Shown: in pieces, positions 1 to 59,394 of the stretch
Layout: every line of letters starts with the position of its first letter
Position numbering within the stretch: the stretch's first letter is position 1
Sequence record: MT612988.1
Length of the DNA: 64,000 nucleotides
Reading direction: 5' to 3' (one strand)
Translations under genes and position numbers: made by a program
Notes under the pieces: generated by a model
Told to the model about the DNA's origin: nothing
Databases searched by the model: none
What the model saw: only the letters and a program-made list of their open reading frames with translations

Positions 1-1239
1 AACATCATCAACCATTTCAGTCACTGGACGTAGACTAGACATGATATTCGGGTGGAATACACGATTCGACTCAGCCATTGTTGAAAATGCAGTCACTGTT
101 TGACGCTCAGGGGTAACACAACCATCGAACGATAGCATAGCTTCAGCAAATGCTTTACAGTCAAAACGTTTCACGCCTTTACGTTCCATCATCGCAATCA
201 TATCAAGAAGCGGGTAACCTGCTTCAGATAATTCAACGCGATATTCTTCACACACACGACCTGCACGCATAGCATGTTCCGCGTTTGTTAGAACAATACT
301 TGTGTTGTTGTGTTTCAGCTTCCAACCGTTGTCAAAATACGCTTCTTTCACATCAACAAGATTTTGCCATGCAGTCGATGTCAGTGGCGCAGTCGCGATT
401 TCTTTCGTGAAAACGTTCTGAGCATGTTCAATCATGGTGATGTTCTGTTTCAGATCGTATGCTTTGAATCCTTCTAGCATCGGCAAGCCAGTATCGTCTT
501 TACGTTCACGAGCGTATGATACGTCTTTCGCTTCTTTTACAATGAACAAGTCCATGATTTTACGGTTCAGTGCAGCCAATGTAAGTGCATTTTTACCAGA
601 CTTGATTTTCATCTCAGTGATGTCAGACAGTTCGGCTTTTGAATCAACCGATTCAACAGTCACATAAACGTCACCAAGCTCGATGTTTTCAGCCATTGAC
701 AGTATTTCAGATGCTGAATTGTCATCAATTGATAGCGATTCAATTACAAGCTTATCAGAATCAGCAAGATTAATTTTCATTTCACGCATAGGGAAAACAA
801 CGTGAATGTCATTTTTCTTATAACCAAGCTTAGTCGCTTCGGCAACAACCTGATCTAAGTAACCGCCTTTAATCACGATGCTAGGAAGACGAGCTTCAGT
901 ACACATGATCATAGACTTAACTTGCTGTAGCTCATGTGCTGGCAATGATAAGAATTCGTTTTCCATAAGCAAGTTGATTGTGCTTACGTTCTCGCTCAGA
1001 TTAATATCGAAGTTTTTCTCATCGACGTTTTTATCTTCAGCAAGTTTAGTACTCATGATAGATTTAAGCTCATTTGCCTTTTCCATCATGCCGATAGTTG
1101 TTTCAACGCCTTTGCCTTTGCTGAACTCAGTAGATGCAGTGCCTAGCTCAACAATAACTTGACCAAACTTAGGGTAGATTTTACCACCCTGAGTTTGACG
1201 GCGATTTTCACTCAGAAATGAGTCAAAGTTACCTAACAT
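1..1239 (-). CDS. Hypothetical protein, >413 aa, runs off the window edge; not in the ORF track
   Basis: Hand translation from ATG 1239 (MLGNFDSFLSENRRQ...) stays open to position 1. AAGGAA SD overlaps the gp55 stop. Confidence 0.85.
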   Translation of the reverse strand, partial: MLGNFDSFLSENRRQTQGGKIYPKFGQVIVELGTASTEFSKGKGVETTIGMMEKANELKSIMSTKLAEDKNVDEKNFDINLSENVSTINLLMENEFLSLPAHELQQVKSMIMCTEARLPSIVIKGGYLDQVVAEATKLGYKKNDIHVVFPMREMKINLADSDKLVIESLSIDDNSASEILSMAENIELGDVYVTVESVDSKAELSDITEMKIKSGKNALTLAALNRKIMDLFIVKEAKDVSYARERKDDTGLPMLEGFKAYDLKQNITMIEHAQNVFTKEIATAPLTSTAWQNLVDVKEAYFDNGWKLKHNNTSIVLTNAEHAMRAGRVCEEYRVELSEAGYPLLDMIAMMERKGVKRFDCKAFAEAMLSFDGCVTPERQTVTAFSTMAESNRVFHPNIMSSLRPVTEMVDDV

Positions 1240-25410: not shown

Positions 25411-25432
25411 AAAAAAGCCCCGTTTCCGAGGC
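25411..25432 (-). terminator. Terminator of the late 3-gene operon
   Basis: gcctcg-gaaa-cggggc followed by T6. Confidence 0.8.
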
Positions 25433-25438
25433 GTTTTA

Positions 25439-25918
25439 TTATTCGAAATGTCTGAACTTCTTCAGCTTTTTCTTTTTCTTTTTCTTACCGATAGTTTCAG
25501 GACCTGCATTAGTTACAGCACCAGTCGTTTCACCAGAAGCAATCGACTCTGGTGAGCTACTACCGTCACCCGCATCACCTGCAACAACAGCTTCTTCGAC
25601 TCGAATACACTCTTTCGCGAAATCTTCAGATAACCCGTATTCTTTTGCAAGCTCAATCAGCAACAAATAAGACGCGCCATAATCAAGTGCTGTTTTACCA
25701 CCTGGTAATGCACCAACCATGCGCTTGATATTTCTCACAGTAACATGAAACATCGTCCAGTTACTTTTCTCTTGTGCAGTTACAGGGTCACGCAACTTCT
25801 TACCATCTGCGTCGATGATACCCATTCGATATGCTTCCCAACGTTCAAAACGAAGATGAAGCAAACGAGACAGACGAAGAGCATAAAAACCATCTGCACC
25901 ACGTTTAGCTACACTCAT
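25439..25918 (-). CDS. gp61.1-family protein with C-terminal gp23 N-arm-like segment and poly-Lys tail
   Basis: FYALRL...WEAYRMGIIDADG...TMFH...RNIKR recalled from the T4-like 61.1 family; adjacent to gp61. Confidence 0.7.
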   Translation of the reverse strand: MSVAKRGADGFYALRLSRLLHLRFERWEAYRMGIIDADGKKLRDPVTAQEKSNWTMFHVTVRNIKRMVGALPGGKTALDYGASYLLLIELAKEYGLSEDFAKECIRVEEAVVAGDAGDGSSSPESIASGETTGAVTNAGPETIGKKKKKKKLKKFRHFE

Positions 25919-26742
25919 TATGCCCCCAAGATTTGCTCAAGTTGACGATCAAAGATCTTCTCTGCTTCATCAAGTGGTAATGGTACGCTGCGCATGAATT
26001 CGTGCAGATTATCTTCGCGAATCAGATTTTCAATAGTACTAGATGGTACTTTGTTCTTGACTTCAACGATCTCGAATCGTGTTCCACCTACACGTAGGAA
26101 GTGACGACCTAGACGGCGATACTCAGCTACTTTGTTCGCTTCTACAAATGCAAACACGCGAGTGATACCTTTTTGAATCATAGTCTCTACTTCAGCAAAC
26201 ATCACGCCTTTCGGTGCAACATCGACATCAGAGAACGATTCAAATAATTCAACGCGCTCTTGAAGTGATAAAACCTTGTTCTGAGCCTCAGGTACAAACA
26301 CTTTACCAACAGCACCAACGTGTTCACACGCTTCAGATAATGTTTTAGTCAATTCTTTATGACCAACTGAAGGAATGCTTGAATCCACGTCCATGATACA
26401 CGCAGCGTCAATCGCACACTCATTCACAACGGTTTCATGTTCGAAGAAATCTTTTTCCGAAACGACAAATAGACCCTCATCAAGTTTAGCTGCAATTGCT
26501 TCAGCTTCTTGTTGTTGTTTCTTCATCGTTGCTTCTTCTTTTTCAGCAGCAGATTCTTTGTCAAACATGGTGATTTTGCCGCGAATTGCGTCTCGAACAC
26601 GAATGTCCATCATCGGTGTGATGTTCGCCCCGAGTTCTTTTTTCTTTTGCGTATATAGTTTCTCGATTTCAACTACACCGTCTTTGGTAGTACATTGGTG
26701 AACCGACGCAATAAGTTCTTCCAATTTATCTTTGATAGCCAT
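25918..26742 (-). CDS. UvsW.1-like domain fused to a degenerate cytidylyltransferase-like domain
   Basis: IASVHQCTTKDGVVEIEKLY...DIRVRDAIRGK versus T4 UvsW.1; C-terminal PSVGHKEL and SSTIENL...EFMRSVP. Confidence 0.55.
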   Translation of the reverse strand: MAIKDKLEELIASVHQCTTKDGVVEIEKLYTQKKKELGANITPMMDIRVRDAIRGKITMFDKESAAEKEEATMKKQQQEAEAIAAKLDEGLFVVSEKDFFEHETVVNECAIDAACIMDVDSSIPSVGHKELTKTLSEACEHVGAVGKVFVPEAQNKVLSLQERVELFESFSDVDVAPKGVMFAEVETMIQKGITRVFAFVEANKVAEYRRLGRHFLRVGGTRFEIVEVKNKVPSSTIENLIREDNLHEFMRSVPLPLDEAEKIFDRQLEQILGA

Positions 26743-26745
26743 TAG

Positions 26746-27591
26746 CTACTCCTCGTAAACAATCGTATTTTTAGTAATTCTTGATTCGAATACAACTTCA
26801 ACACGTACACCATAAGGCAATGCCTTAGAACGGCGACATGCATCATTTCTAATCAACATATACGGGTGATATACAGTATCTTTAATATCTTTCGCGTTCA
26901 ACAAAACATCACCGTTAATATGCAAGGTACCGCGTTTGAATACAAAATCATCTAGTGTAAAGCTATTGACTACAACAAGACCGTTATTGAGAATGTCTGA
27001 ACCAAATACAACATGATTTATTTCGTCGTCTCGTAGTCTGCGTGCGATTGGCTGGCTAAGTCTCTTCACTTTACCATCGTCAGAATAGTCCGATAATGTA
27101 ACCATCTTCTTGACTATCATTTGTGATAAAAGCTTACGAGCTTCAGTGCCGTGAATAACGTCAGTACTAGCCCAACGCTCGGCATTTGATTTTTTAATCG
27201 AAATCGGAAAATCGCCGCTTACGGTCTTCAATACCATATCGGCTTTTTTGTTGTTTTTTGTGTCGTGACCAGTCATTTCAATCGACTGAACACCTTTTAT
27301 TACTCGTCGACCAATTTTAATCCGAGTACAGCCAGAATCAATGTGTTGCTTTACAATATTATAGAAATTGCGTTCATTCTCGATGCCCGGATTAGATGTT
27401 GGTTTGACGTATACTCTGCATTTTTCCATCTGTATACAACCAATTGAACTGCCTGGGTCGCACTTCTTGTACGTCCCGTCAAGCTCTTTCGCAAGTTTAA
27501 CAATTAGACCAAGTCGATTTTCATCTGTGTAGATAACGATCTTTCGGCTATTGATAATTCTCGCGTCATATCTTAACAAAACATCTATCAT
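26746..27591 (-). CDS. PD-(D/E)xK nuclease-like late protein
   Basis: ENERNF...KADMVL...PISIKK pattern; late promoter and RBS-occluding hairpin upstream. Confidence 0.5.
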   Translation of the reverse strand: MIDVLLRYDARIINSRKIVIYTDENRLGLIVKLAKELDGTYKKCDPGSSIGCIQMEKCRVYVKPTSNPGIENERNFYNIVKQHIDSGCTRIKIGRRVIKGVQSIEMTGHDTKNNKKADMVLKTVSGDFPISIKKSNAERWASTDVIHGTEARKLLSQMIVKKMVTLSDYSDDGKVKRLSQPIARRLRDDEINHVVFGSDILNNGLVVVNSFTLDDFVFKRGTLHINGDVLLNAKDIKDTVYHPYMLIRNDACRRSKALPYGVRVEVVFESRITKNTIVYEE

Positions 27592-27593
27592 AG

Positions 27594-27642
27594 TGCATGA
27601 ACACCATCTTTAATACCATACCAGTATTTAGATGTTCATGCA
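27594..27642 (-). promoter_or_regulatory. Late promoter TCTAAATA (27625-27632) inside an RBS-sequestering hairpin
   Basis: Perfect 10-bp arms tgcatgaaca (27594-27603) and tgttcatgca (27633-27642), plus inner pairing. Confidence 0.8.
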
Positions 27643-27655
27643 GATAGACTACCAC

Positions 27656-28180
27656 TTAGAAGTCGTAACTTACCTCTTTGGACTCACGACGTTTGTCAAG
27701 AAGTTGTCGCAGATCAGTTAAACGAATCATCGGCTGACCGATGTTACGCTGCAAGTTATCACAACAAACGTTCACGTAACGATAGTCATCAATCGTTGCG
27801 TAATGCACGTGCCCGTGAATGCTGAAATGACCACGCAGTTCATCGGGGTGTAATGGAAAATGACTCAACCAACCCAACTTTTTGTACTTTTCACAACCGC
27901 GAATCACGTCAAACGCACGCATGTAGCTTGAAACAGGAAGATCGTCATGATTCCCGCCATATTGTACTTTACGACCCGGCAAACCAGCAAGAATTCCAAC
28001 AGCTTCTTCAGTAAATGCAGTATCACCAAGCATAATCACAGTGTCACGCTTGCGAACGTTCTTCAACCAGAAGTCAACAATCCAGTCGGTATTCGCTTGA
28101 GTGTCTTCAATGTCATCCCGAAACTTACCAATATTTTTGTGACCTAAATGCAGATCACTTGTAATCCAAACACAACTCAT
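27656..28180 (-). CDS. Calcineurin-like phosphoesterase
   Basis: SDLHLGH, LGD, GNHD, SHFP, HGHVH. Confidence 0.9.
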   Translation of the reverse strand: MSCVWITSDLHLGHKNIGKFRDDIEDTQANTDWIVDFWLKNVRKRDTVIMLGDTAFTEEAVGILAGLPGRKVQYGGNHDDLPVSSYMRAFDVIRGCEKYKKLGWLSHFPLHPDELRGHFSIHGHVHYATIDDYRYVNVCCDNLQRNIGQPMIRLTDLRQLLDKRRESKEVSYDF

Positions 28181-29748: not shown

Positions 29749-29773
29749 CAAAAAAAGCGCCCGAAGGCGCTTT
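29749..29773 (-). terminator. Terminator after nrdD
   Basis: agcgcc-ttcg-ggcgct followed by a T-run. Confidence 0.85.
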
Positions 29774-29774
29774 C

Positions 29775-31610
29775 TTAACAGTGTTTAACTCGATTTTGCA
29801 TTTCGACAGTCTTGCCGTGATTCCACCCACGAGCACCCGGGTTACCGAGATAACCGCAGACACGTCTCGTTACATTGAGCTTTTCAGGGTCGCGTTCACC
29901 ACAAACAGGACAAGAATAACCCAGCGAATCACCATGAGCTTCACCAGACCAACCACACGTACACTGATCAATCGGGGTATTCGTACCGAAGTAAGCTACT
30001 TTAGTGTAAGCATAATCCCATACGCGCTCTAGACCTTTGATGTTATCTCGCATATTCGGGAACTCAGCATAACAGATGAAACCACCGTTTGCATGAATTG
30101 GGTATGCAGCTTCAAAATCAATTTTCTCAAATGGGTTAACTTTCTTGAACACGTCTAAGTGAAACGAGTTTGTGTAATAGTCTTTGTCATTGATACCTGT
30201 AATGACACCGTATTTCTCTTGGTCGAGACGACAGAAACGATCACACAGCGATTCACTTGGTGTACTGTACAGACTGAAACCGTAGCCCGTCAGTTCTTTC
30301 CATGCATCTGTGTACGCTCTAAGAGTTTCCACAATCTTTTCAGCGAGGAATTGTTTGTGCTGTGACTCAAACGTATGCATGTCTTTATCTGGCGAAAGCA
30401 ACGTTACTGCTTCGTGTAACCCGATATAACCAAGCGAGATACTTGAACGACCGTGTTTGAAAACTTCACTGACTTTATCAGTTGGCTTCAAGCGCACGCC
30501 CATTGCACCTTCACAGTATAGAATCGGAGCAACTGATGCAGTTACATCATCAAAACGCTTAATACGCAACATCAATGCTTCGTAAGCTAGTGTACAACGC
30601 TCGTGTAAGATCTCGAAGAAGCGTTCAGTATCACCCGATGCTTCAATAGCAATACGCGGGATATTGATTGAGACGACGCCTAAGTTATTACGACCATCGA
30701 ATACCGTTTCACCATCTTCGTTCTTCCAGTCACCCAAGAATGAGCGACAGCCCATTGGAGACTTAAACCCACCAGTCGTTTCAACTAGTTTGTCATAGTT
30801 CAAAATGTCTGGGTACATACGCTTACTTGCACATTCAAGAGCTAACTTTTTGATGCCGTAGCACGGGTCGCCTTCTTTTAGGTTCACGCCGTCTCTCAAT
30901 GTGAAAACAAGCTTAGGGAAAATAGCAGTTTTCTTAGTCTTACCTAGACCTGCAATACGATTCTGAAGAATACTTTTTTGAATAAGTTTTTCTTCCCACG
31001 ACGTACCTAACCCGAAGTTGATTGTCGTGAATGGTGTCTGACCGTTTGAAGTCTGCATCGTATTGACTTGATATTCAAACGTCTGGAATGCATCGAACGT
31101 TTCCTTTTCAACACGCTTTCGTGCAAAGATAGCAGCTTTAGAATCAGAGTCGGGATGTTCTTCGCGACCTACTTCGAGCCATTTATAATATGACTTACGA
31201 ACATAAGGTGCTAGGACTTCGTCGATTCTATTGATCGTGTTACCGCCGTAGATATGGCTACTTACTTGCTGAATAATCTGAGTTACAACAGTGGCAGCAG
31301 TGCTAATACTGTTTGGTTCTTCGATTTCAGCATTACCCATTTTGAAACCGCCTTCAAACATGCCTTTGATATCAATAAGCATACAGTTGAATTGCGGGAA
31401 TAATGGGCTGTAGTCAAGGTCATGAAAATGAATATCGCCGTCGATATGTGCATCTGCAATATGCTTCGGTAGATAGTCTTCAAGTGCGTAATGTTTCGAC
31501 ACTGTGCCAGCTACTAAGTCACGCATTGTAGGGATTACTTTCGAATCTTTATTTGCATTCTCTTTGTTGTTACCCGAACCGCTAACAATGTCTAAAATGT
31601 CGTGTTTCAT
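29775..31610 (-). CDS. nrdD: Anaerobic ribonucleoside-triphosphate reductase (uninterrupted)
   Basis: IHFHDLDY, NCMLI, PMGCRSFL, GRNNLGVVSIN, PSESLC, CPVCG, RRVCGYLG. Confidence 0.97.
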   Translation of the reverse strand: MKHDILDIVSGSGNNKENANKDSKVIPTMRDLVAGTVSKHYALEDYLPKHIADAHIDGDIHFHDLDYSPLFPQFNCMLIDIKGMFEGGFKMGNAEIEEPNSISTAATVVTQIIQQVSSHIYGGNTINRIDEVLAPYVRKSYYKWLEVGREEHPDSDSKAAIFARKRVEKETFDAFQTFEYQVNTMQTSNGQTPFTTINFGLGTSWEEKLIQKSILQNRIAGLGKTKKTAIFPKLVFTLRDGVNLKEGDPCYGIKKLALECASKRMYPDILNYDKLVETTGGFKSPMGCRSFLGDWKNEDGETVFDGRNNLGVVSINIPRIAIEASGDTERFFEILHERCTLAYEALMLRIKRFDDVTASVAPILYCEGAMGVRLKPTDKVSEVFKHGRSSISLGYIGLHEAVTLLSPDKDMHTFESQHKQFLAEKIVETLRAYTDAWKELTGYGFSLYSTPSESLCDRFCRLDQEKYGVITGINDKDYYTNSFHLDVFKKVNPFEKIDFEAAYPIHANGGFICYAEFPNMRDNIKGLERVWDYAYTKVAYFGTNTPIDQCTCGWSGEAHGDSLGYSCPVCGERDPEKLNVTRRVCGYLGNPGARGWNHGKTVEMQNRVKHC

Positions 31611-48696: not shown

Positions 48697-48722
48697 TCTA
48701 AATATGTATAACTGTATTTATA
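48697..48722. promoter_or_regulatory. Overlapping divergent late promoters: TCTAAATA (+, 48697-48704) and TATAAATA (-, 48715-48722)
   Basis: Motifs lie in the uvsW / 48736 intergenic region. Confidence 0.7.
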
Positions 48723-48735
48723 GAGGTCTAAATTC

Positions 48736-48945
48736 ATGACAAGAGACGAAATGTTTTACAAGATGAAAGATGGTTGCTTTAAGTTTGAGCATAAAGGCAA
48801 GAAATATCACGCGACTTTATGCAAGCATTATCTACCACATCTTGATTGCAATCGAGAAGAACAACGTAAAAATGAAAACGGTGCAGATAATGAACTTACA
48901 TTTTTCGATTTAAATCGAAATGTGTGGGTAACAATTGAATGCTAA
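48736..48945 (+). CDS. Small WYL_2/SH3-like hypothetical protein
   Basis: FKF..K...HATL...LP...FFDL...W pattern. Confidence 0.45.
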   Translation: MTRDEMFYKMKDGCFKFEHKGKKYHATLCKHYLPHLDCNREEQRKNENGADNELTFFDLNRNVWVTIEC

Positions 48946-50982: not shown

Positions 50983-50990
50983 TCTAAATA
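50983..50990 (+). promoter_or_regulatory. Late promoter TCTAAATA
   Basis: Directly after the terminator, 22 nt before ATG 51013. Confidence 0.75.
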
Positions 50991-51012
50991 ATAGTAAACA
51001 AAGGGGTTAACA

Positions 51013-51606
51013 ATGATAGAATTTTTAACAGAAATGGACAAAGCTAAACAAACCGGTAGATGGGCTCAATTTAAAGCAGCAACATCGGGTTCGAAAGGTG
51101 AAGTTAAAAAGCGTATGCAGCGCAAAGGTGGCTTCTGGGGTGTGTTTGCAGGTTTGATCGCGAGTGCGACAGCATCGGGTGAACTTAGAAAGCACAATAA
51201 GTCACTAGAAGACCATAAGCTAAGAATGGAGCGTGCAGCAGTGAACACAATTCACAGTCTGAATGTTCTTAAAGACGTAATCGAGCTTGAACGTCCTCGT
51301 GACGAAGTAATGAAAGCTGCAAAGCGTTTAAAGCTTGATAACATGGAAATGAAGAAATACGCAACCGAAATGATTCGTGTCGTAGATGAATACAAGCGTG
51401 TTCATGACGAAGATAAGAAGGCAGGTGCGTTTCGTTTTAATGTGAAAGAATACGACCGTCATGATTTTCGTGAGATTTACCATCACTTGAACATGATTGA
51501 AGATAGCACATTTTACGTCGATAAAGCAGCGTCATCGGCTATGACTGGCGATACTGAATACGCAATTCGTATGATTCGCAATATTACAAACGCAGCAACG
51601 AGGTAA
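51013..51606 (+). CDS. Hypothetical late helical protein with CTS-like N-terminus (MIEFLTE)
   Basis: FLTE is the sequence preceding the T4 gp23 cleavage site; late promoter. Confidence 0.75.
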   Translation: MIEFLTEMDKAKQTGRWAQFKAATSGSKGEVKKRMQRKGGFWGVFAGLIASATASGELRKHNKSLEDHKLRMERAAVNTIHSLNVLKDVIELERPRDEVMKAAKRLKLDNMEMKKYATEMIRVVDEYKRVHDEDKKAGAFRFNVKEYDRHDFREIYHHLNMIEDSTFYVDKAASSAMTGDTEYAIRMIRNITNAATR

Positions 51607-57849: not shown

Positions 57850-59394
57850 TTATAGACCCTTAACGAATACACGACGGAAGTAAGCGTTTTTACCCATTGA
57901 AGCTGCAACAGGCGCGCCGTTACCAACTTTTTCAGCAGCCTTAGTAGGATCTGCGAATGGGTTAACTTGAATACCGTAACGAGTTTTGAAACCAATTACA
58001 GGTTGGAAGTTCTTGCTGTCTGAACCACGTAGTGGAGTCAGCGGTACGTATGGTGAGTAGAACACACCCGCGTCCATTTCAGTAGAACCTTTGAAACCAA
58101 CTGTGAAGTAATCGTTCACTGCGTATTGGTCGATGAACACTTTGAAGCGACCACCTAGAACACCCGCGAACACAGTTTGGTTTGTGTCAGTGTTCATTGA
58201 ACCGTCTTGCATACCTTGTGCAGCAGGGCCAACAAGAGTATCAGTCATTGATAGTGCAGAAACTACGTTGCGTGATGCAATGATGAAGTTACCGTTACCA
58301 CGACCAGTTTGACGACCGATTTCGTTCGCTTCTTTCTCAATTTGAATTAGTAGAGCTTTGTAAGCTTCACCAGCCCAACGAGCACCTTTAACGTCTACAG
58401 CGTCTGCGAAGTCGAATACACCCGCTGCGCCTTGACCTTGAGTCCAACCAGACTTACCGATTTGCGCTTGAGAGTTAACTAGGTTAACGATTTCGCGGTT
58501 AAGCTCAACCATAACTTCGTTAGCAAGAATACCGCTAAGTTCAGCGTCAGCGTCTAGACCGTGTACAGCACGTAGATCTTGTGCAAGCTCGATTGAGTAT
58601 TGAGCTTTCAATTGACGTGATTTCGCTTCAACAACTTGTTTGTCGATGCGGAATGACATCTCGTTCCACTCGTTGTTGCTTGAACCGTTGAAGTTCTCTT
58701 GTAGTTCAGCCTGAGATGTTGCCATACCAGCGTCGATCTCAACTAGAAGACCACCTGCAACTGCGTCAGTGTATTCTGTAGCAGTCATTTCACCTGCAAC
58801 TGCTAGAGTAACAGCGCCAAGTGCTAGGAAGTAACGAGTGTCAACGTCGCCGCCAGAAGTAGTTACTTCAGCTTTGTACGGAGTACCGTCAGTTGCAGCA
58901 CCAGTAGTTGGGAAATCTGCAATTGTTGATGCAGCAGCTTGACCAGAGAACGAAGCGTCAGCTTGACGAGTCGGGTGGAAAGCTTCTTTACCAGTTAGCG
59001 GGTCTTTACCGTATACTGAGCGAAGTGTGAATACTTGGCTAGTTGGGCCAGTCATTGGCTGAACACCAGCGATATCGAATGCGATAAGCTGAGGAATAGC
59101 ACGACGAACCATACCCATTACAGTCGGACCGATGTTTGTTACTGCACCAGTAGTAACACCTTGAGCGATGTTAGACGGATCGTAACCATGGTCACCGTTA
59201 ACTACAGCTTCGTTTAGACCAGCATTGAATGCTTCGATTAACTGTGGGTCACGGTACATTGGATCGTTGTTGATGTCGCGATCTTGGTTTTCAAAGATTT
59301 TCGACATGATTTTTTGCTTAGTTGCAGTCGCAATCTCTGGCATTTCCGCACCGTCTGCTTCAAGCAATTCTTTCCATTTTTCAGTTAGGTTCAT
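57850..59394 (-). CDS. 23: Major capsid protein gp23
   Basis: LNE|AVVNGDHGY, VQPMTGPT, WNEMSFRIDK, YSIELAQDLRAVHG, YSPYVPL, GFKTRYG. Confidence 0.98.
   Translation of the reverse strand: MNLTEKWKELLEADGAEMPEIATATKQKIMSKIFENQDRDINNDPMYRDPQLIEAFNAGLNEAVVNGDHGYDPSNIAQGVTTGAVTNIGPTVMGMVRRAIPQLIAFDIAGVQPMTGPTSQVFTLRSVYGKDPLTGKEAFHPTRQADASFSGQAAASTIADFPTTGAATDGTPYKAEVTTSGGDVDTRYFLALGAVTLAVAGEMTATEYTDAVAGGLLVEIDAGMATSQAELQENFNGSSNNEWNEMSFRIDKQVVEAKSRQLKAQYSIELAQDLRAVHGLDADAELSGILANEVMVELNREIVNLVNSQAQIGKSGWTQGQGAAGVFDFADAVDVKGARWAGEAYKALLIQIEKEANEIGRQTGRGNGNFIIASRNVVSALSMTDTLVGPAAQGMQDGSMNTDTNQTVFAGVLGGRFKVFIDQYAVNDYFTVGFKGSTEMDAGVFYSPYVPLTPLRGSDSKNFQPVIGFKTRYGIQVNPFADPTKAAEKVGNGAPVAASMGKNAYFRRVFVKGL

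What the first reader, a model, noticed from the sequence alone, without database searches (positions are those of the whole stretch)
26746..27642. Hairpin-gated, late-only PD-(D/E)xK-like ORF: the control logic of T4 homing endonucleases
Seen: a 49-nt stem-loop (perfect 10-bp outer arms plus inner pairing) buries the putative RBS (GATGGTG) on read-through transcripts. The late promoter TCTAAATA sits in the 5' arm, so late transcripts lack that arm. The protein has E...(K)AD...ISIK. Known: this arrangement restricts T4 I-TevI, gene 49, e and soc to late translation. Inference: a toxic nuclease, either a free-standing homing endonuclease of an unusual fold or a packaging-stage nuclease.
Basis: partly seen in the sequence, partly recalled or inferred. 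Interest (0 to 1): 0.7.

Follow-up and report, generated by a model that had tools for sequence, protein, structure and literature searches.

The report
Hairpin-gated late restriction-like phage nuclease gene
A KVP40-type Vibrio phage keeps a conserved gene for a restriction-enzyme-like protein silent early in infection with an RNA hairpin that only late transcripts lack; it is a core gene of T4-like phages, not a selfish homing endonuclease.

Summary
On the minus strand, a 65-nt stem-loop (27648..27584) pairs the Shine-Dalgarno-like GGTG and part of the AUG of a 281-aa ORF (27591..26746). A late-promoter-like TCTAAATA (27632..27625) ends the 5' arm, so transcripts starting near 27619 lack both 5' arms. 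The fold is stronger than shuffles (z -4.8). It persists in five diverged lineages, with compensatory changes at 8 of 11 stem positions and no broken pair. TCTAAATA is enriched in the window and precedes tail-tube and tail-fibre genes.

The protein has two predicted parts. The first is an N-terminal nucleotidyltransferase-like domain without catalytic acids. The second is a C-terminal domain whose best structural matches are the monomeric restriction enzymes HhaI, MspI and HinP1I, with invariant E73, D118 and K133 (AD-x12-SIK).

The homing-endonuclease reading fails: the gene is present with the same neighbours in all 48 complete KVP40-like genomes. It also occurs in Stenotrophomonas, Xanthomonas, cyanobacterial and uncultured marine T4-like phages.

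Late gating is family-wide: 63% of relatives carry a late-promoter motif upstream, against 12% of other ORFs. In marine relatives the gene often carries a T4 capsid-targeting-like N-terminal peptide and sits among genes that do. Function, timing and activity remain untested.

The parts
26746..27591 (-). ORF, 281 aa (homologue of KVP40.0017; phrog_12709, unknown function)
   Evidence: homologues
27394..27591 (-). Residues 1-66: small alpha/beta domain with a Pol-beta-type nucleotidyltransferase-like fold and no conserved catalytic carboxylates
   Evidence: VIA-align Z 5-6.2 to TUTases and CD-NTases. The same domain in relative P0012 reaches Z up to 9.4. No conserved acidic pair in alignments A1 and A7.
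26749..27393 (-). Residues 67-281: restriction-endonuclease-like (PD-(D/E)xK) domain. E73 is at 27375..27373, D118 at 27240..27238, S131 at 27201..27199 and K133 at 27195..27193.
   Evidence: AF2 model with pLDDT 88.8. Matches: HhaI Z 6.9, MspI 6.4, HinP1I 5.8, I-Ssp6803I 5.3. ESM feature neighbours carry PF11463/PF09208. E, D and K are invariant in 77 diverse members.
27584..27648 (-). Stem-loop: basal stem 27648..27643 / 27589..27584; outer stem 27641..27631 / 27605..27595; inner stem 27628..27623 / 27617..27612
27625..27632 (-). TCTAAATA, a late-promoter-like motif (T4 consensus TATAAATA at -13..-6). The predicted late start is A27619.
   Evidence: The same 8-mer precedes the tail tube gene (63776-) and the tail fibre gene (39204+). 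A CTAAATA late-promoter type is described for Aeh1 (PMC1524935).
27602..27608 (-). GATGGTG, a weak Shine-Dalgarno-like element. Only TGGTG is invariant among relatives, and GGTG lies in the 3' arm.
27656..28180 (-). Upstream gene on the same strand: calcineurin-like phosphoesterase (phrog_547). It follows nrdG, and no terminator lies between it and the ORF.
25918..26742 (-). Downstream gene, 3 nt after the ORF's stop, with its own GAGGAG Shine-Dalgarno inside the ORF's last codons. It is a UvsW.1-domain protein, adjacent to the ORF in all KVP40-likes and in L016-L018.
29751..29776 (-). Intrinsic terminator after nrdD: upstream limit of the transcription unit that holds the ORF
25417..25432 (-). 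Intrinsic terminator before the primase gene: downstream limit of the unit

Best explanation
The ORF is a conserved gene of T4-like phages. It encodes a two-domain protein: an inactive nucleotidyltransferase-like N-domain and a restriction-endonuclease-fold C-domain of the MspI/HinP1I/HhaI type. It is most likely a metal-dependent DNA endonuclease.

In KVP40-type phages the gene sits inside a transcription unit with nrdG, a phosphoesterase and a UvsW.1-domain gene.
- Transcripts that read through from upstream fold a 65-nt stem-loop that pairs the Shine-Dalgarno-like GGTG and part of the AUG. The ORF is therefore skipped, while the flanking genes, which have their own ribosome sites, are translated.
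- After replication begins, gp55-directed RNA polymerase starts at the TCTAAATA promoter, at about 27619. This start lies downstream of both 5' arms, so the late mRNA cannot form the structure and is translated.

Shown here: the structure, its conservation and covariation, the promoter motif and its use before late genes, the fold and the invariant residues, and the gene's phylogenetic distribution.

Inferred: transcript ends, timing, nuclease activity and substrate.
For: Hairpin:
- z -4.8 in the window and -5.1 to -8.0 in three diverged relatives.
- Across five lineages, 8 of 11 outer-stem positions show changes on both sides and none is broken. The 5' arm always ends at the C of CTAAATA, and the AUG lies 35-40 nt after it.
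- Opening the -15..+5 region costs 12-21 kcal/mol on read-through RNA against 5.6-8.8 on RNA started at the predicted late +1.
- Among 10 late-promoter/gene pairs in the window, this ORF has the highest read-through cost, 16.1 kcal/mol; gp19, gp22, gp23 and gp24 have 0.9-6.0.

Promoter:
- TCTAAATA occurs 8 times against 2.8 expected.
- It stands before the tail tube and tail fibre genes.
- Published T4-family late promoters include CTAAATA.

Family-wide late signal:
- [AC]TAAATA lies within 90 nt upstream in 22/35 family genes against 43/358 other ORFs, Fisher p 6.5e-11.
- The gap in opening energy between read-through and late-start RNA has a median of 4.3 kcal/mol against 0.6, p 0.0012.

No terminator lies between nrdG and the ORF, and terminators bracket the unit.

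Protein:
- Two independent AF2 models (pLDDT 88.8 and 95.2) both match MspI, HinP1I and HhaI over about 150-180 residues.
- Protein-language-model neighbours carry the R-HINP1I and Endonuc-MspI families.
- D118 precedes strand 119-123 and K133 ends strand 126-133, after helix 68-85 that carries E73. This mirrors HhaI's SD-x11-EAK, with D at the start of beta2 and K at the end of beta3 (PMC7026639).
- E, D and K are invariant in 77 members.

Against: - No transcriptome or 5'-end data could be found, so the promoter, its timing and the read-through are all inferred.
- The structural Z-scores (5.7-6.9) are within the range the tool calls common.
- No Pfam or PDB sequence match exists.
- The middle catalytic position is serine, not D/E, so activity is not assured.
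- The Shine-Dalgarno is weak (GGTG, 10-nt spacing), and the late-start RNA still costs about 8 kcal/mol to open.
- The family-wide statistics use related loci and automatic start-codon choice.
Confidence: 0.62

Rival explanations
1. The protein is made late because it is a virion passenger: it is packed into the head and injected to act at the start of the next infection, as T4 internal proteins and Alt are.
For: - About a quarter of family members begin with a T4 capsid-targeting-like decapeptide. Example: P0012 MKTFKTFITE against T4 IPIII MKTYQEFIAE and IPI MKTFKEF. 41 of 177 members have it, against 2.6% in shuffles.
- The peptide also heads short forms that lack the N-domain (P0082 in L023).
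- In marine loci, unrelated neighbouring genes (DUF6267, a HAD-like gene and others) start with the same peptide.
- Residues 4 and 7 (targeting) and 8 and 10 (cleavage) match what is published for IPIII (PMC9026906).
Against: - The window's protein and all KVP40-like copies lack the peptide. The ORF cannot be extended upstream.
- In the P0012 model the peptide is the start of helix 1 of the N-domain.
- No virion proteome was found.
Confidence: 0.17
2. It is a free-standing homing endonuclease with a PD-(D/E)xK fold.
For: - The control logic equals that of I-TevI, segB and mobE.
- A PD-(D/E)xK homing endonuclease exists, I-Ssp6803I, and it is a weak structural match (Z 5.3).
Against: - Present in 48 of 48 complete KVP40-like genomes at the same place.
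- The gene has diverged to a degree similar to its neighbours (about 86% DNA identity to KVP40).
- It is found in several T4-like lineages near the uvsX/gp41/nrd replication genes.
- The family has about 300 clusters at 50% identity.
Confidence: 0.03
3. It is a packaging-stage or recombination nuclease that trims branched DNA late in infection.
For: - Late gating resembles that of T4 gene 49.
- Weak matches to Hjc-type resolvases.
- The gene is always adjacent to a UvsW.1-domain gene in the KVP40 clade.
Against: - KVP40 and phi-pp2 encode gp49 endonuclease VII.
- The best matches cover both sheets of monomeric sequence-specific restriction enzymes.
- The UvsW.1 adjacency is lost outside the clade.
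Confidence: 0.1
4. The stem-loop is not a translational gate. It would instead be a terminator, attenuator, processing or stability element. A further possibility is that the protein is a catalytically dead DNA binder.
For: - In some relatives (S-8S55, L058, L061) the hairpin next to the late motif is a true terminator with a T-run.
- Serine replaces the usual acidic residue.
Against: - In the window no T-run follows the stem, and the terminator scan did not call it.
- The 3' arm covers the SD-like element, and the basal stem covers the AUG, in all four diverged versions.
- E73, D118 and K133 are invariant.
Confidence: 0.08

Closest known systems
T4 genes e, soc, 49 and I-TevI (also I-TevII/III, segB, Aeh1 mobE): an RBS-sequestering hairpin with a late promoter in or near its 5' strand (PMC3014915, PMC2988022)
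   Same: - The gene is embedded in an earlier transcription unit.
- The stem pairs the SD and/or the AUG.
- The late promoter is placed so that late RNA lacks the 5' strand.
- The arrangement is conserved among relatives.
   Different: - The promoter is TCTAAATA rather than TATAAATA.
- The host gene is a conserved core-like gene of KVP40-type phages, of unknown role.
- The gate is kept across lineages by covariation and, in other lineages, replaced by terminator-type hairpins.
- Nothing has been tested experimentally.
Monomeric Type IIP restriction endonucleases MspI, HinP1I and HhaI (PDB 1SA3, 1YNM, 6UKE)
   Same: - Best structural matches over both beta-sheets.
- Similar size for the matching part (about 215 of 281 residues).
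- Helix followed by three strands, with D at the start of one strand and K at the end of the next.
- Spacing AD-x12-SIK against HhaI's SD-x11-EAK.
   Different: - No detectable sequence similarity.
- Serine at the D/E position.
- An extra N-terminal nucleotidyltransferase-like domain.
- No neighbouring methyltransferase.
- Phage-encoded and late-gated.
- Z only 5.7-6.9.
T4 internal proteins IPI/IPII/IPIII and their capsid targeting sequence
   Same: - Many relatives of the ORF, and their gene neighbours, begin with M-x-x-F/Y-x-x-F-I/L-x-E.
- They are preceded by late promoters.
   Different: - The window's own protein has no such peptide.
- T4 internal proteins are small basic proteins or anti-restriction factors, not nuclease folds.
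Virion-associated restriction endonucleases of chloroviruses (recalled from memory: Agarkova et al. 2006, J Virol; not checked here)
   Same: - A virus-encoded restriction-type enzyme, made late and carried in the particle, would be the closest functional analogue if the capsid-delivery reading is right.
- ESM neighbours of the ORF include giant-virus clusters with HinP1I/MspI-type families.
   Different: - Chlorovirus enzymes come with cognate methyltransferases and known sites.
- Neither is seen here.

Membership tests
T4-type late-promoter/hairpin translational gate | [quoted passage not shown] | tested here: met
   z -4.8. GGTG and the G of the AUG are paired. The opening cost is 16 kcal/mol on read-through RNA.
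T4-type late-promoter/hairpin translational gate | A late promoter positioned so that late transcripts lack the 5' strand | tested here: met
   TCTAAATA at 27632..27625. The predicted +1 at 27619 lies in the apical loop. The motif is validated only by enrichment and by its position before late genes. The 5' end is not mapped.
T4-type late-promoter/hairpin translational gate | The gene lies inside an early or middle transcription unit that reads through it | tested here: inconclusive
   Same-strand nrdG and phosphoesterase genes lie upstream with no terminator between them and the ORF, and terminators bracket the unit. No expression data.
T4-type late-promoter/hairpin translational gate | Structure conserved with compensatory changes | tested here: met
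   8 of 11 stem positions are changed on both sides across five lineages, with none broken. The covariance model finds L017.
T4-type late-promoter/hairpin translational gate | Translation repressed early and allowed late | not testable with these tools
   Needs reporters or ribosome profiling.
PD-(D/E)xK nuclease superfamily | alpha-beta-beta-beta-alpha-beta core | tested here: met
   Predicted elements: H68-85, E90-93/96-99/101-106, E119-123, E126-133, E139-142, H144-160. The same core appears in the P0012 model.
PD-(D/E)xK nuclease superfamily | Invariant Asp at the start of beta2, and Lys of the (D/E)xK motif on beta3 | tested here: met
   D118 and K133 are invariant in 37 and in 77 sequences.
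PD-(D/E)xK nuclease superfamily | An acidic residue two positions before the Lys | tested here: not met
   S131 is nearly invariant. An acid may instead come from the invariant E73 or from E138. From memory, non-acidic residues occur at this position in some restriction enzymes.
PD-(D/E)xK nuclease superfamily | Metal-dependent phosphodiester cleavage | not testable with these tools
   Needs an enzyme assay.
MspI/HinP1I/HhaI-type monomeric restriction enzymes | Two-sheet fold superposable on solved members | tested here: inconclusive
   They are the top matches outside the N-terminal domain for two models, but with Z of only 5.7-6.9 and rmsd 3.9-5.8. Foldseek E is 0.2-0.9.
MspI/HinP1I/HhaI-type monomeric restriction enzymes | Sequence membership in PF11463, PF09208 or a related family | tested here: not met
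   No Pfam hit for any of 37 members, even at E 10. The only link is language-model neighbours.
MspI/HinP1I/HhaI-type monomeric restriction enzymes | A cognate methyltransferase gene next to it | tested here: not met
   The neighbours are a phosphoesterase and a UvsW.1-domain protein.
Free-standing homing endonuclease | Sporadic presence or absence among close relatives | tested here: not met
   48 of 48 complete KVP40-like records have it, with the same flanks.
Free-standing homing endonuclease | Cleaves the endonuclease-free allele of a neighbouring gene | not testable with these tools
   No endonuclease-free relative was found to serve as a target.
T4 capsid-targeted internal proteins | An N-terminal peptide with aromatics at about positions 4 and 7 and (I/L)-x-E at 8-10 | tested here: not met
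   The window protein starts MIDVLLRYDA. The feature is met in many relatives.
Pol-beta-type nucleotidyltransferase (N-domain) | The fold, plus the G[SG] and [DE]x[DE] catalytic motifs | tested here: not met
   The fold matches: Z 6.2 for the window protein and 9.4 for P0012. No conserved acidic pair follows the GSS(I)G.

The most novel reading that the evidence does not exclude
This is one branch of an undescribed, phage-only family of restriction-enzyme-fold proteins. In many marine T4-like phages these proteins would be loaded into the capsid through a T4-type targeting peptide, together with a cluster of other peptide-tagged proteins (DUF6267 and others). They would then be injected with the DNA. 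That would be a bacteriophage counterpart of the virion-borne restriction enzymes of chloroviruses, aimed at host or rival DNA. The KVP40 clade has lost the peptide but keeps strict late-only synthesis through a covarying hairpin.
Probability: 0.2. Interest if true: 0.8.

Novelty: new variant of a known kind. Interest (0 to 1): 0.55.

Why it matters
The control device is textbook T4 biology. Here it is shown by covariation to be maintained over long divergence on a conserved gene outside the T-even group. Across lineages the same outcome, late-only synthesis, is reached with different hairpins: some sequester the RBS and some are terminators. This suggests selection against early expression of this protein. 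The protein gives a first structural assignment to phrog_12709 / KVP40.0017. That family has hundreds of members in marine T4-like phages and no annotation. If its relatives really travel in the capsid, marine myoviruses carry a nuclease-fold passenger, which bears on host take-over and phage-phage competition in the sea.

Tried and rejected
- **RNA evidence.** One run holds the region, but only as contigs of a near relative. It shows no transcript ends. No KVP40-type transcriptome or virion proteome turned up in the literature. The KVP40 genome paper is not held.
- **Sequence-level family assignment.** Pfam shows nothing real on the protein or on 37 members. The PDB profile search gave only chance ModA hits.
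- **Covariance model.** It recovered L017 but not L018. Its alignment was contaminated by reverse-strand matches of the palindromic hairpin, so I tabulated the pairs from per-sequence folds instead.
- **Possible paralogue.** The equal-length 378-aa gene in L011 is unrelated.
- **C-terminal part of the downstream UvsW.1-domain protein.** No informative neighbour.
- **The roughly 410-aa neighbour in marine loci.** DUF6267 / phrog_455, with no solved relative.
- **Palindrome avoidance as a clue to a recognition site.** Many palindromes are depleted, so nothing is specific.

Full report
**Identity of the window.** The 2.3 kb around the finding is 100% identical to Vibrio phage vB_ValM_R10Z (MT612988.1; window position = record position minus 62000). 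It is 87% identical to KVP40, the type Schizotequatrovirus, a T4-like myovirus. The ORF runs 27591..26746 (281 aa). It is annotated 'hypothetical' and corresponds to KVP40.0017 and phrog_12709, of unknown function.

**The observation.** The mRNA-sense sequence reads ...TCTATC-T-GCATGAACATC-TA-AATACT-GGTAT-GGTATT-AAAGAT-GGTGTTCATGC-ACTAT-GATAGA...
- Outer stem: 27641..27631 with 27605..27595, 11 bp including one G-U.
- Inner stem: 27628..27623 with 27617..27612.
- Basal stem: 27648..27643 with 27589..27584. It includes the G of the AUG (27591-27589).

The MFE is -21.6 kcal/mol against -11.0 +/- 2.2 for shuffles, z -4.83. TCTAAATA (27632..27625) closes the 5' arm and runs into the loop. With the T4 rule that the 8-mer occupies -13..-6 (PMC1524935), the late start falls on A27619, beyond both 5' arms.

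**Is the structure selected?**
- In ten KVP40-like phages the intergenic stretch is nearly invariant, although the flanking genes are only 77-87% identical. Phage 1.081.O shows C-G to U-A and A-U to G-U in the stem, and the apical loop varies.
- Three metagenomic relatives encode proteins 69%, 56% and 49% identical to the ORF (L016, L017, L018). All three keep a hairpin at the same place, with z -5.1, -8.0 and -5.3. Their stems differ: GGGCACTTC/GAAGTGCTC in L017 and GAACCC/GGGTTC in L018.
- Pairs were tabulated relative to the C of CTAAATA. Eight of eleven outer-stem positions change on both sides somewhere among the five lineages, and none is broken. The 5' arm always ends at that C. The AUG follows 35-40 nt later.
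- A covariance model built from the close sequences finds the L017 element at the right place.
- Opening the -15..+5 window costs 16.0, 12.3, 21.5 and 20.1 kcal/mol on read-through RNA. On RNA starting at the predicted +1 it costs 8.8, 8.0, 6.6 and 5.6.

**Is TCTAAATA a late promoter here?**
- It occurs 8 times in the window against 2.76 expected; no shuffle reaches 8.
- Five copies lie 20-55 nt before gene starts on the right strand. These include the tail tube gene (63776, minus strand) and the large tail-fibre gene (39204, plus strand).
- TATAAATA stands before gp22, gp23 and gp24.
- A C at -12 is the rule in Aeromonas phage Aeh1.
- Of ten promoter/gene pairs in the window, the target ORF has the highest read-through opening cost: 16.1 kcal/mol, against 0.9-7.8 for the structural genes.

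**Transcriptional context.** On the minus strand, a strong terminator follows nrdD (29776..29751) and another precedes the primase gene (25432..25417). Between them lie two small ORFs, nrdG, the phosphoesterase, the target ORF, the UvsW.1-domain gene and one more ORF. No terminator lies next to the hairpin and no T-run follows it. The downstream gene has its own GAGGAG, 7 nt before its ATG. Early translation of the flanking genes therefore need not involve the ORF. This is the published T4 arrangement for e, soc, 49, I-TevI and others. No transcript data exist to confirm the timing.

**The protein.**
- HMMER against 1.8 billion representatives finds 297 clusters at E below 0.001, mostly 280-380 aa. 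None has a Pfam domain.
- AlphaFold2 gives confident models for the window protein (pLDDT 88.8) and for a 32%-identical relative, P0012 (pLDDT 95.2).
- Residues 1-66 (1-90 in P0012) match the core of Pol-beta-type nucleotidyltransferases, with Z up to 6.2 and 9.4. The family has no conserved acidic pair after its GSS-G motif, so this domain is not expected to be catalytic.
- The rest matches HhaI (Z 6.9), MspI (6.4), HinP1I (5.8) and I-Ssp6803I (5.3) for the window protein. For P0012 it matches MspI (6.6), HinP1I (5.8) and HhaI (5.7), over 140-180 residues. Foldseek lists the same enzymes, along with Hjc, Mrr and HincII, at weak E-values. These Z-scores are not above the tool's stated background.
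- The theme recurs in two models and in a sequence-based embedding search, whose neighbours include clusters carrying PF11463 (R-HINP1I) and PF09208 (Endonuc-MspI).
- E73 sits on helix 68-85. D118 precedes strand 119-123. S131-I-K133 ends strand 126-133. HhaI has SD-x11-EAK, with D at the start of beta2 and K at the end of beta3. E73, K116, D118 and K133 are invariant in 77 diverse members, and S131 is nearly so.
- I conclude that this is a restriction-endonuclease-fold domain that is probably active. The serine at the usual acidic position is the main doubt.

**Not a homing endonuclease.** All 48 complete KVP40-like records carry the gene between the phosphoesterase and the UvsW.1-domain gene. 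Homologues also occur in Stenotrophomonas Menderavirus phages, Xanthomonas phages X1 and BUDD, Synechococcus phages S-8S55 and Sf-FR1, and many uncultured marine T4-like contigs. They often lie near uvsX, gp41 or a Metallophos gene. That is vertical, core-like behaviour. KVP40-type phages also already have gp49, which weakens the packaging-nuclease idea.

**Family-wide regulation.** Among 78 further loci from IMG/VR, 22 of 35 non-redundant family genes have [AC]TAAATA within 90 nt upstream on the sense strand. Among other ORFs of the same loci the figure is 43 of 358 (Fisher p 6.5e-11). The antisense rate is 6%. With a looser start-codon rule the count is 40 of 55.
- Typical arrangements are a terminator followed by TATAAATA and then the gene (for example L027, L028, L044, L084, L085, and L022).
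- In S-8S55, L058 and L061 the motif abuts or sits inside an intrinsic terminator directly before the start codon.
- For family genes the read-through versus late-start gap in opening energy has a median of 4.3 kcal/mol, against 0.6 for other late-motif ORFs (p 0.0012). It is at least 4 in 22/35 against 5/22.
- Relatedness among loci and automatic start choice limit these numbers.

**An unexpected lead.** Many relatives start with a peptide like the T4 capsid targeting sequence.
- T4 IPIII and IPII begin MKTYQEFIAE, and IPI begins MKTFKEF.
- Relatives begin MKTFKTFITE, MKSFLEFLTE, MLSFKTFIAE, MRSKEFIFE, MAKTFAQFLNE and similar.
- A simple pattern is met by 41 of 177 members, against 2.6% of shuffles.
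- The peptide also heads short forms that lack the N-domain, for example P0082, whose start overlaps the stop of a lysozyme gene.
- In the marine loci the genes next to the family gene encode unrelated proteins: DUF6267 of about 410 aa, plus proteins of 262, 201 (HAD-like), 184 and 148 aa. These start the same way.
- Published work places targeting at residues 4 and 7 and gp21 cleavage at residues 8 and 10.
- This looks like an internal-protein gene cluster. However, in the P0012 model the peptide is the first turns of helix 1, and the window's own protein lacks it. I therefore keep capsid delivery as a rival for this gene and as the most novel open reading for the family.

**Verdict.** It is wrong about homing, and its claims of toxicity and of a packaging role are unproven.

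Noticed in passing
window 50983-51606 (+): A 197-aa gene (phrog_16422, unknown function) starts MIEFLTE, which resembles a capsid-targeting peptide. A TCTAAATA lies 23 nt before its ATG. It is a candidate KVP40-type internal head protein.
   Followed up: partly
window 1-1239 (-), runs off the window: A 481-aa hypothetical protein (phrog_14490), just downstream of the gp55 late sigma gene, starts MLGNFDSFLSE. Six of eight residues match the N-terminus NFKSFLKE of an unrelated 413-aa protein next to the family gene in marine locus L062. The rest of the two proteins is unrelated.
   Followed up: partly
window 48697-48729, both strands: TCTAAATA on the plus strand and TATAAATA on the minus strand form an inverted repeat, so two late-promoter motifs face away from each other. 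The small gene at 48751 (+) has the second largest read-through versus late-start opening gap in the window (8.4 kcal/mol).
   Followed up: partly
whole window: Strong palindrome avoidance. Observed/expected ratios are GATC 0.54, GGCC 0.26 and CCGG 0.49. CTGCAG, ACGCGT, AGCGCT, CAGCTG, GACGTC and GAGCTC are absent against 9-19 expected.
   Followed up: no
window 25439-25918 (-): A 159-aa ORF is annotated 'major capsid protein' in MT612988.1. It matches only unknown-function phage families and ends in a lysine run (KKKKKKKLKK). The real major capsid gene is at 57850-59394 (-). The annotation looks wrong.
   Followed up: no
window 25918-26742 (-): The downstream partner has a UvsW.1 domain (residues 14-69) and about 200 further residues of unknown fold, with a weak UPF0102/YraN-like hit at E 0.011. 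It stays adjacent to the ORF in all KVP40-likes and in L016-L018, but not in other lineages.
   Followed up: partly
L021 4514-5716; L027 3340-4566 and many IMG/VR loci: A DUF6267 / phrog_455 protein of about 400 aa lies directly downstream of the family gene in cyanophage S-8S55 and in many marine contigs. In the contigs it carries the capsid-targeting-like peptide. In S-8S55 it starts at the conserved KNTH, without the peptide.
   Followed up: partly
L021 3445-3476; L058 about 2160-2197; L061 about 2405-2443: In these relatives the late-promoter-like motif abuts or lies inside an intrinsic terminator hairpin directly before the start codon. Late transcripts would start inside the terminator and escape it. 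This is a transcriptional version of the same gate.
   Followed up: partly
window 27596-27598 (-): An out-of-frame ATG inside the 3' arm opens a 10-codon ORF that overlaps the real start. It is lost in phage 1.081.O (ATA), so it is probably not functional.
   Followed up: no
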